A DNA stretch of 64,000 bases from Octopus bimaculoides (taxonomy: Eukaryota), in the NCBI RefSeq assembly GCF_001194135.2, contig NC_068981.1, positions 184,164,507 through 184,228,506 of the forward strand. Direction: 5' to 3'. Shown piece by piece: positions 58,701 through 60,490 of the stretch. The notes under the pieces were generated by a model. The model was given only the letters and a program-made list of their open reading frames with translations, had not been told where the DNA came from and did no database searches. Positions within the stretch are counted from its first letter, which is position 1. The number at the start of each line of letters is the position of its first letter. The translations under genes and the position numbers were made by a program.

Positions 58701-60063
58701 TCTATTAATAACGATTGTGATCGTTAAAGATTGCCGGCGATTACGGCCTTTACTTGGACAAATTCACAACGATGCCACAAGTGTCAAGTTCCATGTAATA
58801 TAAATGAACTCTAGACATGCAATGTTAAAACAATACCCTAGATTACTACTTCTAAAGGTTTAACACAACTAATAAAACAAATAGCTTTAATCGAGTAAGC
58901 AGAATGAAATTATAAAGACTGGAATTAGATATCGAAACCAGATTACAAAATTAACTTGTTAGAGGCATAATCAAAACATGTTTCTCAATAGTGAGTGACT
59001 TAAAAAGAAAAATATGGCAATAAATCCTCTGAATTTACAATGTGGCTTCTAGCGCGTTGTATTAAAGATCTTTCAAATATTCTATTAGCCCTTACATGTC
59101 TGTCTTCTTTACACAAATACGTTAATACCCTTTCATCAATGCCCTTCGCTTTTCTCTCTGCAATGACATTATTCAAATGTCATAATTAATCTTTATTCTG
59201 TCGGAGTTTTAATACAGAAATGTAATCGATAAATGATGTAAACAACTGAAATGTGTAATAAACAAGTCGAACGTTTTGAGAGGTGCCCTTTGCCGAGAGT
59301 GAAGTGTACTGAAAAGAAAACTAACCCCAAATTGAATAAAACACGATGAGTAGGTTGGTTCTTGCAACCAAGATTAGCTGTATTGCATTCGATGGTAATA
59401 ATTCTTATTCATTTTGTCCTAGCATGTAACTTCAGATGAAGTAAAATGATGACATGTATGGCTTTGTCAAGGACGTTCGCGATGTATGTGTAATGATAAC
59501 AAACTCGACATTGAAAGCAAGAGACTGCGGTTCGATTTATTTGGTGGAATCCTTAATTTCACCGTACTTGCAAGACATAGATAAAAAAATTTTTTTAAAT
59601 ATTTTCTGAACCCGAGAGAAAGAATATAAATGTCCTTGAACCGAACTGTCAAAACATCATATTTATGTATGTGTATAAATTTATGTTAAATGATATCGTC
59701 AAATGGCTGTATCTAAAAACAGTCATGTTCAATAACATATAATGTTTCAAATAACATAATAATAAGATAACAATGTTTCAAATAGTTATTTACTAAGAAG
59801 TAAACAGTCAAATATACAATAATAATATCTGTAATCCGATTGTAAATATTTACCTGTGAGAAAGACCTTAAATTCAAAGCATTCGAAATTTTAGCTTGAC
59901 TTGGTCGAGTCACTCGGTTTTGTATGAGTTTTCGGCAATTCCTGATAGCTCGAGAATAACTATGATAGGGATTATTTGTAAACTTATTAAATGTCCGTCT
60001 ACAAGTGTTGAGTGTTAGGTGAGAATGGGACAACAGCATGGCATGTTGGATGGAGGCAGCCAT
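26756..60063 (-). CDS. VARS2: Mitochondrial valyl-tRNA synthetase, whole gene span (26 coding exons, 3177 nt CDS, ~1058 aa; 1068 aa if ATG 60093 is used)
   Basis: Hand-spliced exons give an uninterrupted frame with all GT-AG introns. It contains [13 protein letters not shown] (HIGH), [32 protein letters not shown] and a C-terminal coiled coil. The short basic N-terminus (no GST-like extension) and [16 protein letters not shown] segments fit the mitochondrial paralogue. Confidence 0.95.
27915..28055 (-). CDS. VARS2: VARS2 exon 25 ([25 protein letters not shown]...KIKA; coiled coil)
   Basis: GLVDP..EL..L motif of the C-terminal tRNA-binding arm; GTAAGT donor. Confidence 0.92.
28580..28761 (-). 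CDS. VARS2: VARS2 exon 24 (VFISSSNE...CQVHLSLQ)
   Basis: Open in the required phase 1-0; strong ttttctctag acceptor and CAG|GTATGT donor. Confidence 0.88.
28860..28995. repeat. (GGT/GAT)n trinucleotide array
   Basis: Visible tandem repeat in VARS2 intron 23. Confidence 0.9.
29557..29668 (-). CDS. VARS2: VARS2 exon 23 ([12 protein letters not shown]...[13 protein letters not shown])
   Basis: WR.P..E and LR....LTK pattern; gacag / GTAAGT; phase 0-1. Confidence 0.9.
29845..29941 (+). ncRNA. Type I hammerhead ribozyme motif (intronic, antisense to VARS2)
   Basis: GCAG-CUGAUGA-GUAC...GUAC-GAAA-CGUACG-UA-CUGC: complete core with all three stems; cleavage triplet GUA at 29930-29932. Confidence 0.75.
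31053..31259 (-). CDS. VARS2: VARS2 exon 22 (ESVKPIL...[14 protein letters not shown]...YPNPKD)
   Basis: Conserved PFMP.L.EEL.Q.L. Confidence 0.96.
32343..32498 (-). CDS. VARS2: VARS2 exon 21 (IDKWILS...[11 protein letters not shown])
   Basis: Anticodon-binding domain motifs D.WILS and FW...CD.YL. Confidence 0.96.
34539..34666 (-). CDS. VARS2: VARS2 exon 20 ([26 protein letters not shown]...)
   Basis: Conserved FCNKIW.A.RF; GTAAGT donor. Confidence 0.96.
34988..35135 (-). CDS. VARS2: VARS2 exon 19 (...[21 protein letters not shown])
   Basis: Conserved FP.GIP.CG.DALRF. Confidence 0.97.
35230..35600 (+). mobile_element. CR1-clade LINE 3' end
   Basis: [10 protein letters not shown]...KHFF....AEAWNKL.ASVV....KSFK; same family as 62325-62920. 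Confidence 0.8.
35620..36030 (-). mobile_element. R4/Dong-like LINE 3' end (restriction-like endonuclease C-terminus, 3'UTR, (AAT)n tail)
   Basis: [41 protein letters not shown]...[14 protein letters not shown]. Confidence 0.75.
36080..36184 (-). CDS. VARS2: VARS2 exon 18 (KMSKS motif)
   Basis: [26 protein letters not shown]; cag / GTAAAC. Confidence 0.98.
36910..37035 (-). CDS. VARS2: VARS2 exon 17 ([25 protein letters not shown]...PFDK)
   Basis: Conserved [13 protein letters not shown]. Confidence 0.97.
38327..38397 (-). CDS. VARS2: VARS2 exon 16 ([24 protein letters not shown])
   Basis: ValRS signature [16 protein letters not shown]. Confidence 0.97.
39159..39261 (-). CDS. VARS2: VARS2 exon 15 ([23 protein letters not shown]...LKQ)
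   Basis: Conserved WV.AR..EEA..KA; phase 0-1. Confidence 0.93.
41447..41537 (-). CDS. VARS2: VARS2 exon 14 ([18 protein letters not shown]...)
   Basis: Class Ia signature [12 protein letters not shown]; donor TCG|GTATTT gives phase 0. Confidence 0.95.
42298..42374 (-). CDS. VARS2: VARS2 exon 13 ([26 protein letters not shown])
   Basis: Matches the ValRS P...W..WL.NI segment; phases fit. Confidence 0.92.
43015..43096 (-). CDS. VARS2: VARS2 exon 12 ([27 protein letters not shown])
   Basis: Conserved RS.DVIEP...QWF; donor GTGAGT; acceptor directly after a (TAT)n tract. Confidence 0.95.
43099..43172. repeat. (AAT)n microsatellite abutting the exon 12 acceptor
   Basis: Visible tandem repeat. 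Confidence 0.95.
43196..43452 (+). mobile_element. R4/Dong-like LINE internal fragment
   Basis: E...[17 protein letters not shown]...[11 protein letters not shown] then a frameshift into IHGQFYRE...LWRWL; characteristic post-RT HGQF.R..W.WL motif. Confidence 0.6.
43746..43849 (-). CDS. VARS2: VARS2 exon 11 ([12 protein letters not shown]...HSMMLPVCS)
   Basis: Conserved RF.AR and H.M.LP.CS; ttttcag / GTAATC. Confidence 0.95.
45203..45330 (-). CDS. VARS2: VARS2 exon 10 ([22 protein letters not shown]...FE)
   Basis: Conserved GAVK.TP.HD..D; ttttccag / GTGAGA. Confidence 0.96.
46087..46202. repeat. (GA)n microsatellite just inside VARS2 intron 9; similar tracts at 17347-17401 and 52650-52735
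   Basis: Visible tandem repeat. Confidence 0.95.
46210..46389 (-). CDS. VARS2: VARS2 exon 9 (editing domain, [21 protein letters not shown]...EFGE)
   Basis: Conserved TTRPET and D.AVAVHP; weak donor G|GTTCCT; phase 1-1. Confidence 0.95.
47509..47617 (-). CDS. VARS2: VARS2 exon 8 ([36 protein letters not shown])
   Basis: Conserved PGY...FG.L.SFAY; ctcag / GTAAGT. Confidence 0.95.
47760..48470 (-). mobile_element. Possible highly decayed RTE-like LINE fragment
   Basis: Only weak frameshifted similarity ([10 protein letters not shown]...; QLWMVKH) to RTE ORF2 C-termini. Confidence 0.3.
49645..49764 (-). CDS. VARS2: VARS2 exon 7 ([40 protein letters not shown])
   Basis: Conserved LVNWSC..SAISD.E; ttttag / GTAAGT. 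Confidence 0.97.
50836..50917 (-). CDS. VARS2: VARS2 exon 6 ([27 protein letters not shown])
   Basis: Conserved LGASLDW...FTMD; GTAAGA donor. Confidence 0.97.
51430..51905 (-). mobile_element. RTE-clade LINE ORF2 C-terminal fragment
   Basis: [25 protein letters not shown]...[18 protein letters not shown]...QLRLFGHVA*. Confidence 0.85.
51983..52147 (-). CDS. VARS2: VARS2 exon 5 ([22 protein letters not shown]...WKWKIE)
   Basis: Conserved DHAGIATQ; AG/GT boundaries; phase 2-2. Confidence 0.97.
53170..53282 (-). CDS. VARS2: VARS2 exon 4 (HIGH motif: [18 protein letters not shown])
   Basis: Translated from the reverse complement; ttgtag acceptor, GTAAGT donor. Confidence 0.97.
54271..54489 (-). 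mobile_element. tRNA-headed SINE (family C), full length
   Basis: Exact 20-bp TSD aatctacctaaatgaattct (54251-54270 / 54490-54509). Confidence 0.88.
54730..54833 (-). CDS. VARS2: VARS2 exon 3 ([35 protein letters not shown])
   Basis: ValRS N-terminal motif; polypyrimidine+AG acceptor; weak donor CAG|GTTTCT. Confidence 0.9.
56378..56438 (-). CDS. VARS2: VARS2 exon 2 ([20 protein letters not shown])
   Basis: tttaatttcag acceptor, AAG|GTACTC donor; 61 nt supplies the phase 0-to-1 link required between exons 1 and 3. Confidence 0.7.
57125..57612 (+). mobile_element. Decayed mariner transposase relic
   Basis: Frameshifted [21 protein letters not shown]...HIEKV...[22 protein letters not shown]...VITG.E...ETK. 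Confidence 0.75.
58524..58639. mobile_element. 116-bp fold-back MITE, probably Merlin-type
   Basis: Perfect 49-bp inverted arms starting GGTAA, 18-bp spacer, exact 8-bp TSD GCATTTTT (58516-58523 / 58640-58647). Confidence 0.88.
59854..60063 (-). CDS. VARS2: VARS2 coding exon 1 (putative mitochondrial presequence [10 protein letters not shown]...LRSFSQ)
   Basis: ATG at 60063 in gtgATGG context; donor CAG|GTAAAT; phase 0; 70 aa with 8 R, 3 K and no D/E. Confidence 0.75.
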
Positions 60064-60093
60064 CACAGTTTGATCGAAACTACTTTCTAACAT

Positions 60094-60365
60094 TGAAGAG
60101 TTACAGAAAGCCGGGAGTATTTCTTTAGCAATTAAACATCATGACCGGGTGATCAGCAATTAACTCAAATAATTAGCCTCATCTATACAGAGTAAAGTTT
60201 TGTCTAATTTATTTTCTCTTCAAATTAAAGTTAACGTTCGATTGTTTAGTTTATAATGTTTTTGTTATAAACAATGATAAAGATGAATAAGTAATTTACT
60301 GAGAAATTGTCCAGCGACAACGGACTTGCTGTTTAGAAAGAAACACACACTTCAAGTGGAAAACG
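60094..60365. promoter_or_regulatory. Shared bidirectional promoter/5'UTR region of VARS2 and GTF2H4
   Basis: Divergent start codons at 60093/60063 (-) and 60366 (+); no repeats in between. Confidence 0.7.
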
Positions 60366-60490
60366 ATGTCAGCAACATTAGAATCAGGCAAATTGGAATG
60401 TAAAGATTTATACGGGTATCTTAGAACTTTGCCTGCAAATGTTCTCGATAAACTCTATAATCATCCGGCAACATGTCTTGCTGTATTCAG
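60366..60490 (+). CDS. GTF2H4: TFIIH subunit p52 coding exon 1 ([42 protein letters not shown])
   Basis: Tfb2/p52 signature LD.[12 protein letters not shown]; aacgATG context; AG|GTGAAT donor. Confidence 0.96.

What the first reader, a model, noticed from the sequence alone, without database searches (positions are those of the whole stretch)
59854..60490. VARS2 and GTF2H4 head-to-head on a ~270-300 bp shared promoter: the same gene pair is adjacent in the human MHC
Seen: the start codons are 272 bp (60093) or 302 bp (60063) from the GTF2H4 ATG (60366), with no repeat between them in an otherwise repeat-saturated window. Established: human GTF2H4 and VARS2 are immediate neighbours at 6p21.33, recalled as same-strand tandem. 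Inference: the adjacency may predate the protostome-deuterostome split and survive in a heavily rearranged cephalopod-type genome, with a switch of orientation. That would suggest a cis-regulatory constraint.
Basis: partly seen in the sequence, partly recalled or inferred. Interest (0 to 1): 0.7.

Follow-up and report, generated by a model that had tools for sequence, protein, structure and literature searches.

The report
Octopus VARS2–GTF2H4 divergent gene pair
In Octopus bimaculoides the mitochondrial valyl-tRNA synthetase gene and the TFIIH p52 gene start back-to-back about 300 bp apart; bivalves and a brachiopod share this compact arrangement, but whether it has the same origin as the human GTF2H4-VARS2 neighbourhood is unresolved.

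Summary
The window is Octopus bimaculoides chromosome 1. VARS2 exon 1 (59854-60093, minus strand) and GTF2H4 exon 1 (60366-60491, plus strand) face away from each other. Their start codons are 272 bp apart, or 302 bp from the better-supported ATG at 60063. They lie in the longest repeat-free stretch of the window. That stretch is unique in the genome and is one of only two domains in 64 kb where CpG is not depleted.

The synthetase is VARS2-type. A separate VARS1-type gene lies on chromosome 2.

The same head-to-head pair, with 225-251 bp between start codons, occurs in a scallop and in the brachiopod Lingula. Consecutive accessions or a shared scaffold indicate it also in another scallop and in Mytilus. 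It is absent in three or four gastropods, an annelid, a nemertean, a tick, amphioxus, a hemichordate and a gar. Mammals have the tandem order DDR1>GTF2H4>VARS2.

The pair is therefore an old lophotrochozoan bidirectional-promoter pair of housekeeping genes. Descent of the adjacency from the bilaterian ancestor is possible but not shown. A shared-promoter constraint cannot explain the mammalian tandem form. This is a new member of a known kind, of modest interest.

The parts
59854..60093 (-). VARS2 (mitochondrial-type valyl-tRNA synthetase) exon 1 coding part, encoding the presequence-like N-terminus. The donor GT lies just below 59854.
   Evidence: 100% match to residues 1-80 of NCBI model P0001; sequence read.
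60061..60063 (-). Likelier VARS2 start codon (MAASIQ...).
   Evidence: O. vulgaris and Argonauta models start here. Context has G at -3 and G at +4. No acidic residue occurs in the 72 residues that follow.
60094..60365 (.). Intergenic spacer of 272 bp (302 bp if counted from 60064): the inferred compact bidirectional promoter.
   Evidence: GC 0.32, CpG o/e 1.04, no repeats, unique in the genome.
60366..60491 (+). GTF2H4 (TFIIH p52 / Tfb2) exon 1.
   Evidence: 100% match to residues 1-42 of P0121.
62085..62192 (+). GTF2H4 exon 2.
   Evidence: Pfam Tfb2 hit; 100% to P0121 residues 42-77.
63596..63727 (+). GTF2H4 exon 3. The remaining 11 exons lie beyond the window, up to 14.9 kb past its end.
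26759..60093 (-). Whole VARS2 coding span, about 33 kb. Among its exons, the one at ~53151-53273 carries the HIGH-type motif [15 protein letters not shown], the one at ~41477-41563 carries [11 protein letters not shown], and the one at 36080-36187 carries KMSKS.
   Evidence: Pfam tRNA-synt_1 exon hits, translations, mapping of P0001.
58056..61084 (.). Repeat-free domain around the two starts. CpG is not depleted over about 58250-61000 of it.
   Evidence: Longest copy-free stretch of the window. CpG o/e is 0.96-0.99 in 2 kb windows, against a window median of 0.34.

Best explanation
The locus is a divergent (head-to-head) pair of two housekeeping genes in Octopus bimaculoides. One encodes the mitochondrial-type valyl-tRNA synthetase VARS2. 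The other encodes the TFIIH core subunit p52 (GTF2H4). Their first coding exons are about 300 bp apart. The short AT-rich spacer most likely acts as one compact bidirectional promoter from which both genes are transcribed outward. It is repeat-free and its CpG is not depleted. The arrangement, though not any recognisable sequence, has been kept since at least the common ancestor of cephalopods, bivalves and brachiopods, and it was lost several times (gastropods, an annelid, a nemertean). What is shown: gene identities, orientation, spacing, repeat exclusion, the CpG pattern, VARS2 orthology, and the same arrangement in other phyla. What is inferred: that transcription starts lie within the spacer, that the two genes share regulatory elements, and that selection on that sharing (or simply the lack of any harmless breakpoint in 300 bp) preserved the pair. 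The mammalian GTF2H4>VARS2 tandem adjacency may descend from the same ancestral pair by inversion of one gene, or it may be independent. The data here do not decide between these.
For: Gene identities. Pfam tRNA-synt_1 and Tfb2 exon hits lie in and beside the window. The NCBI octopus models P0001 and P0121 map at 95-100% identity. VARS2 orthology. A second ValRS on chromosome 2 is 44-88% identical per aligned segment to a fish VARS1. In a careful LG+C20 tree the window gene sits in a clade with vertebrate VARS2 and arthropod mitochondrial ValRS at 100/99 support. The internal order of that clade follows the species tree, and it is apart from a 99/96 VARS1 clade. The alternative placement is rejected at p-AU 0.0023. 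The clade also holds Drosophila 'valine--tRNA ligase, mitochondrial'. The N-terminus has 11 R+K and no D/E in its first 72 residues. Conservation. A head-to-head ValRS|GTF2H4 pair occurs in the scallop Ylistrum with 251 bp between ATGs and in Lingula with 225 bp. Both synthetases fall in the VARS2 clade. In Mizuhopecten the two genes have consecutive accessions on a 400 kb scaffold, and VARS and GTF2H4 accessions are consecutive in three Mytilus annotations and two numbers apart on one 1.67 Mb scaffold in M. coruscus. Promoter-like state. The region is the longest repeat-free stretch of the window, is unique in the genome, and has CpG o/e near 1 against a window median of 0.34. Background. Short 5'-5' pairs are the class most enriched among conserved metazoan microsyntenic pairs (PMC3514665).
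Against: There are no transcription-start, expression or chromatin data, so 'shared promoter' rests on geometry alone. No k-mer is shared among the octopus, scallop and Lingula spacers beyond what shuffled sequences give, so no conserved regulatory element is demonstrated. The pair was lost in Gigantopelta and Haliotis, Owenia and Lineus, so any constraint is not absolute. The spacer is not a vertebrate-style CpG island (GC 0.32). VARS2 monophyly was not robust in a noisier 51-row quick analysis that included the longest branches. There the alternative tree was 4 lnL units better, with p-AU 0.575.
Confidence: 0.75

Rival explanations
1. One reading: GTF2H4 and VARS2 were already neighbours in the bilaterian ancestor. 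The lophotrochozoan head-to-head form and the mammalian tandem form are two descendants of that one adjacency, related by inversion of a single gene.
For: The same orthologous pair is adjacent in mammals and in three lophotrochozoan groups (and the window). One inversion of either gene converts <V G> into G> V>, which is exactly the mammalian order. Loss is frequent even where the pair is clearly ancestral: three of six sampled lophotrochozoan lineages lack it. Absence elsewhere is therefore weak evidence. No VARS2-clade gene was seen for amphioxus, hemichordates or echinoderms, so their 'non-adjacency' may only reflect gene loss. The single octopus DDR-like gene, whose mammalian counterpart DDR1 flanks GTF2H4, lies 7.1 Mb away on the same chromosome.
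Against: The pair is not adjacent in gar (V-set and SH3BP5 genes flank GTF2H4), amphioxus, Ptychodera or the tick. In the tick the mitochondrial ValRS is on a different chromosome. Within deuterostomes, one gain is more parsimonious than three losses plus an inversion. Orientation is not conserved, so the only evident constraint, a shared promoter, would have been broken. Both genes tend to stay on one chromosome, which makes a second, independent juxtaposition less improbable. By my own rough estimate, some tens of human-octopus shared adjacencies could arise by chance within shared linkage groups.
Confidence: 0.35
2. Convergence: the head-to-head pair arose on the lophotrochozoan stem, and the tandem pair arose separately on the lineage to mammals during reshuffling of the MHC region.
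For: The distribution is patchy. Orientation and relative position differ: VARS2 is 5' of GTF2H4 in molluscs and 3' of it in mammals. The gar neighbourhood differs from the mammalian one on both sides.
Against: It needs the same two genes, out of thousands, to become immediate neighbours twice. Losses are demonstrably common, so a patchy distribution is also what an ancestral pair would give.
Confidence: 0.4
3. Neutral persistence: the pair has no regulatory coupling. It survives only because a 225-300 bp spacer between two essential genes offers almost no breakpoint that leaves both promoters intact.
For: No conserved sequence motif is found in the spacers. Both genes are essential single-copy housekeeping genes. 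The pair has been lost repeatedly without visible consequence.
Against: Spacer length is held in a narrow band (225, 251 and 272-302 bp) across more than 500 My in genomes of very different size and repeat load. This is more than a simple absence of breaks would predict, because insertions would also have to be excluded.
Confidence: 0.3

Closest known systems
Human/mammalian GTF2H4-VARS2 neighbours at 6p21.33 (MHC class I framework: DDR1, GTF2H4, VARS2)
   Same: The same two orthologous genes are immediate neighbours. VARS2 orthology is supported.
   Different: Mammals have a same-strand tandem, with VARS2 about 0.9 kb downstream of the GTF2H4 3' end, so there is no shared divergent promoter. 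In octopus VARS2 lies upstream of GTF2H4 on the opposite strand. The octopus DDR-like gene is 7.1 Mb away rather than adjacent.
Conserved head-to-head housekeeping pairs with bidirectional promoters, e.g. HSPD1-HSPE1 (conserved ancestral microsyntenic pairs of Irimia et al. 2012, PMC3514665)
   Same: 5'-5' orientation, a spacer under 1 kb, housekeeping genes (one with a mitochondrial function), and conservation across phyla.
   Different: HSPD1-HSPE1 keeps its orientation from fungi to humans. Here the orientation is conserved only within lophotrochozoans, and the pair is missing in many lineages. Co-expression is untested.
Vertebrate CpG-island bidirectional promoters
   Same: Divergent genes, a short spacer, CpG not depleted relative to the surroundings, and transposable elements excluded.
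   Different: GC is only 0.32, so the usual CpG-island criteria (GC above 0.5) are not met. No ETS, NRF1 or YY1-type motif was established.

Membership tests
VARS2 (mitochondrial-type valyl-tRNA synthetase, class Ia) | Class I catalytic core with HIGH and KMSKS motifs, and the ValRS-type editing and anticodon-binding architecture | tested here: met
   [26 protein letters not shown] and KMSKS are read from the exons. Pfam tRNA-synt_1 hits lie over the cut-off. PF00133 and PF08264 are recorded for model P0001.
VARS2 (mitochondrial-type valyl-tRNA synthetase, class Ia) | Groups with vertebrate VARS2 rather than cytosolic VARS1 | tested here: met
   The VARS2 clade has 100/99 support in the careful tree. 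The alternative is rejected at p-AU 0.0023. A separate VARS1-type gene lies on chromosome 2. Caveat: the alternative was not rejected in the noisier 51-row set, and long-branch attraction between fast-evolving copies cannot be excluded.
VARS2 (mitochondrial-type valyl-tRNA synthetase, class Ia) | N-terminal mitochondrial targeting presequence and mitochondrial localisation | tested here: inconclusive
   Composition fits: 72 residues without D/E, 11 R+K and 14 S+T. No targeting predictor was run and no localisation data exist.
GTF2H4 / TFIIH p52 (Tfb2) | Tfb2 domain plus the Tfb2 C-terminal domain; single-copy orthologue | tested here: met
   Pfam PF03849 exon hits occur only at this locus in the genome. 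P0121 carries PF03849 and PF18307 and is 60-71% identical to GTF2H4 of other phyla.
Bidirectional promoter | Two divergently oriented genes with less than 1 kb between their starts | tested here: met
   272-302 bp between start codons. Transcription starts themselves are unknown.
Bidirectional promoter | Divergent transcription starts within the spacer and co-regulated expression | not testable with these tools
   No CAGE, RNA-seq or ATAC data were available.
Conserved ancestral microsyntenic pair (bilaterian-level) | Adjacency present in both protostomes and deuterostomes by descent | tested here: inconclusive
   Present in cephalopod, bivalves, brachiopod and mammals. Absent in gar, amphioxus, hemichordate, tick, annelid, nemertean and gastropods.
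Conserved ancestral microsyntenic pair (bilaterian-level) | Conserved relative orientation | tested here: not met
   Head-to-head in lophotrochozoans, tandem in mammals.

The most novel reading that the evidence does not exclude
GTF2H4-VARS2 is a bilaterian-ancestral gene pair, part of the proto-MHC framework. Its original state was a ~250-300 bp bidirectional promoter, still intact in cephalopods, bivalves and brachiopods after more than 550 My. It was remodelled into a tandem pair by a single-gene inversion on the lineage to tetrapods. If so, the spacer would be one of the longest-lived promoter architectures known that has no detectable sequence conservation.
Probability: 0.35. Interest if true: 0.45.

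Novelty: new member of a known kind. Interest (0 to 1): 0.3.

Why it matters
Cephalopod genomes are heavily rearranged and full of repeats. A 300 bp repeat-free spacer that keeps two unrelated housekeeping genes together in octopus, bivalves and a brachiopod is a clean, small example of gene order that resists scrambling. It offers a tractable test of whether such pairs persist through shared regulation or merely through lack of safe breakpoints: a short fragment, two essential genes, and natural 'knock-outs' of the linkage in gastropods, annelids and nemerteans. It also adds an invertebrate data point for two framework genes of the human MHC class I region. It is not a new kind of system. Conserved 5'-5' housekeeping pairs are well described.

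Tried and rejected
1. NCBIfam valS (TIGR00422) on the own genome scored only 5 of 50 candidates. It was useful only to show the second locus on chromosome 2.

2. Raw tblastx of the chromosome 2 paralogue against the window was swamped by interspersed repeats. It became usable after filtering.

3. Look-ups of the octopus model P0001 and the Priapulus protein found no record.

4. Shared motifs were sought in the octopus, scallop and Lingula spacers. Nothing exceeded shuffled expectation. A by-eye 'CAACGGA' match between octopus and scallop was therefore dropped.

5. The supplements of Irimia et al. 2012 are not held, so I could not check whether the pair is on their list.

6. Literature searches for GTF2H4/VARS2 synteny returned only vertebrate MHC maps.

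7. Extended MHC-framework linkage in octopus gave mixed results. The DDR-like gene is on the same chromosome at 7.1 Mb and ATAT1 is on chromosome 21. The flotillin and CCHCR1 Pfam models found nothing and are uninformative.

8. The idea that vertebrate VARS2 is a recent VARS1 duplicate within the MHC was considered. The careful tree and AU test reject it, although a noisier data set did not.

9. An annotation artefact for exon 1 was considered and rejected. The exon is conserved in the O. vulgaris and Argonauta models, and the same geometry recurs in other phyla.
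Full report
**What the window is**

Searches of the window's own assembly place it at chromosome C1:184,164,507-184,228,506 of a 2.34 Gb genome. The best protein matches are NCBI models from Octopus bimaculoides, on a contig of the same length as C1.

**The observation**

- **VARS2 exon 1.** On the minus strand, an open frame from 60138 down to a GT donor at 59854 reads [21 protein letters not shown]...NLRSFSQ. It is identical to residues 1-80 of the NCBI valine--tRNA ligase model P0001, which is 1068 aa long.
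- **VARS2 gene body.** The rest of that model maps to a series of further minus-strand exons, down to 26759. These exons carry the class I motifs [26 protein letters not shown] and KMSKS.
- **GTF2H4.** On the plus strand, exon 1 is 60366-60491, followed by exons at 62085-62192 and 63596-63727. Eleven more exons lie beyond the window.
- **Spacing.** The two start codons are 272 bp apart.
- **Likelier VARS2 start.** If translation begins at the second in-frame ATG (60063), the spacing is 302 bp. I think this start more likely. The O. vulgaris and Argonauta models begin there. It has the better initiation context. The 72 residues after it contain no acidic residue and 11 Arg+Lys, as a mitochondrial presequence would.

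**The spacer and its surroundings**

- 32% of the window has a second copy elsewhere in the window.
- 58056-61084 is the longest stretch without one, at 3029 bp.
- The segment 59700-60600 matches only itself in the whole genome.
- No tandem repeat lies between the two ATGs.
- CpG observed/expected is about 1.0 over 58.25-60.75 kb in 500 bp windows. It is 0.96-0.99 in the 2 kb windows spanning 58.5-61.0 kb, against a window median of 0.34. Only one other region of the window (1.0-5.75 kb) reaches this level.
- GC is only 0.32, so this is not a vertebrate-type CpG island. It is the signature expected of a domain that stays unmethylated in the germ line.

I therefore confirm the observation in full.

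**Which synthetase is it?**

- **Two ValRS loci.** The genome has two. The one on chromosome 2 is 44-88% identical per aligned segment to a fish VARS1, well above the window gene's match to VARS1 sequences.
- **Quick tree.** A 51-sequence tree rooted on bacteria was built with a site-heterogeneous model. It splits animal ValRS into a VARS1 clade and a second clade.
  - The VARS1 clade runs from sponges to vertebrates and includes the octopus chromosome 2 gene.
  - The second clade holds the window gene, other lophotrochozoan genes, Priapulus, arthropod mitochondrial ValRS and vertebrate VARS2.
- **Named members.** The second clade includes Drosophila 'valine--tRNA ligase, mitochondrial', a tick 'mitochondrial-like' gene, mites and flatworms.
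- **Careful tree.** A run without the longest branches gives the VARS2 clade 100/99 support. Its internal order is vertebrates | (Ecdysozoa, Lophotrochozoa), as in the species tree.
- **AU tests.** On the cleaned set, the AU test rejects the alternative that vertebrate VARS2 belongs with VARS1 (ΔlnL 19.7, p = 0.0023). On the earlier, noisier 51-row quick data set the same alternative was not rejected and even scored 4 lnL units better (p = 0.575).
- **Conclusion.** The phylogenetic support is good but depends on which long branches are included. Attraction between two fast-evolving groups cannot be excluded. Gene-tree/species-tree parsimony also favours a single old duplication.

**Is the adjacency conserved?**

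I used all twelve context look-ups, mostly starting from GTF2H4, which is single-copy.

| Lineage | Arrangement |
|---|---|
| Scallop Ylistrum | Head-to-head with a 1068 aa ValRS; 251 bp between ATGs |
| Brachiopod Lingula | Head-to-head with a 1055 aa ValRS; 225 bp between ATGs |
| Scallop Mizuhopecten | Consecutive accessions on one 400 kb scaffold |
| Mytilus | VARS and GTF2H4 accessions consecutive in three annotations; two numbers apart on one 1.67 Mb scaffold in M. coruscus |
| Warthog | Tandem DDR1>GTF2H4>VARS2 |
| Bat (Pteropus) | Tandem DDR1>GTF2H4>VARS2 |
| Gastropod Gigantopelta | Not adjacent; same chromosome |
| Haliotis (four species) | Not adjacent: different scaffolds in two species; same chromosome in the other two, with accessions hundreds apart |
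| Annelid Owenia | Not adjacent |
| Nemertean Lineus | Not adjacent |
| Tick | Not adjacent; mitochondrial-type ValRS on another chromosome |
| Amphioxus | Not adjacent |
| Hemichordate Ptychodera | Not adjacent; no ValRS exon within 10 kb by tblastn |
| Spotted gar | Not adjacent |

Both the Ylistrum and the Lingula synthetases fall in the VARS2 clade.

**What this means for the head-to-head pair**

- The head-to-head pair is old. It is shared by cephalopods, two bivalve orders and a brachiopod. It therefore dates at least to their common ancestor, and annelids, nemerteans and some gastropods lost it later.
- The spacer has stayed between 225 and about 300 bp in genomes that differ greatly in size and repeat load.
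- No sequence word is shared among the three spacers beyond what shuffled sequences give.
- The best-supported reading is a compact bidirectional promoter for two housekeeping genes. It is preserved either by shared regulatory elements or because no break or insertion in so small a spacer leaves both essential genes working.
- This is the class of pair that Irimia et al. found most enriched among conserved metazoan neighbours: 5'-5' orientation with a spacer under 1 kb, HSPD1-HSPE1 being the textbook case (PMC3514665).
- The promoter function itself is inferred. I had no transcription-start or expression data.

**What this means for the link to the human pair**

For common descent:
- It is the same orthologous pair.
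- A single inversion of either gene turns <VARS2 GTF2H4> into GTF2H4> VARS2>.
- Losses are plainly frequent, so absence elsewhere is weak evidence.
- I found no VARS2-clade gene at all for amphioxus, hemichordates or echinoderms. Their ValRS hits are VARS1-type, so those lineages may be uninformative.
- The single octopus DDR-like gene lies 7.1 Mb away on the same chromosome. This echoes the mammalian DDR1-GTF2H4-VARS2 order.

Against common descent:
- Gar, amphioxus, hemichordate and tick all lack the adjacency.
- Within deuterostomes one gain is cheaper than three losses plus an inversion.
- The orientation differs.
- The genes tend to remain on one chromosome, which raises the chance of a second, independent juxtaposition.
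- My rough estimate, an inference and not a computation, is that some tens of octopus-human shared adjacencies could arise this way. A single shared pair noticed after the fact is therefore not significant by itself.

A shared divergent promoter is destroyed by the very orientation switch the hypothesis requires. I put common descent at about 0.35, convergence at about 0.4, and leave the remainder undecided.

**Verdict**

The feature is a new member of a known kind: a conserved head-to-head housekeeping pair. Its specific interest is that it survives in a scrambled cephalopod genome and involves two framework genes of the human MHC region. Interest is modest (0.3).

Noticed in passing
window 1000-5750: This is the only other domain in the window where CpG is not depleted (o/e 0.97-1.12, against a window median of 0.34). 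No convincing coding frame was seen there. It may be another promoter or unmethylated element, and it abuts an assembly gap at about 5700-6170.
   Followed up: partly
window ~9850-10050, 15250-15500, 19180-19400, 34150-34400, 50590-50790, 57880-58060, 61560-61750 and others: Many copies of one short interspersed element, whose translation reads ...[27 protein letters not shown].... They occur in both orientations, in VARS2 introns, in GTF2H4 intron 1, and also all over the chromosome 2 VARS1 locus. They account for much of the 32% of the window that has a second copy within the window.
   Followed up: partly
window 8036-8392 (minus strand): An open frame of 118 aa resembles the C-terminal part of a Tc1/mariner-type transposase (...WQQDSAPCHTS...). 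It is probably a transposon relic downstream of VARS2. It was not scanned against Pfam.
   Followed up: no
G000:C1:177119751-177120269: The only DDR1/2 discoidin-like domain hit in the octopus genome lies 7.1 Mb from the VARS2-GTF2H4 pair on the same chromosome. DDR1 is the immediate upstream neighbour of GTF2H4 in mammals. ATAT1, another human MHC class I framework gene, is on chromosome 21 instead.
   Followed up: partly
G000:C2:129380001-129430000 (L015-L019): This is the cytosolic VARS1-type gene of octopus, with a lysine-rich linker exon. VARS1-type ValRS and GTF2H4 share a chromosome in Ptychodera, Glandiceps, Strongylocentrotus, Antedon, a tick, a katydid, lungfish, sturgeon and a worm lizard, judged by equal contig lengths. 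They do not in octopus.
   Followed up: partly
L031 9164-9166 and window 60061-60063: The Lingula and octopod VARS2 proteins both begin Met-Ala-Ala-Ser (MAASW.. and MAASIQ..). The rest of the two presequences is not visibly similar. This may be chance.
   Followed up: no
window, several places (e.g. 5700-6170, 11330-11590, 12150-12560, 13800-14070, 17400-17990, 30420-30640): Runs of N (2404 bases in all) mark assembly gaps. Most are flanked by microsatellites.
   Followed up: no
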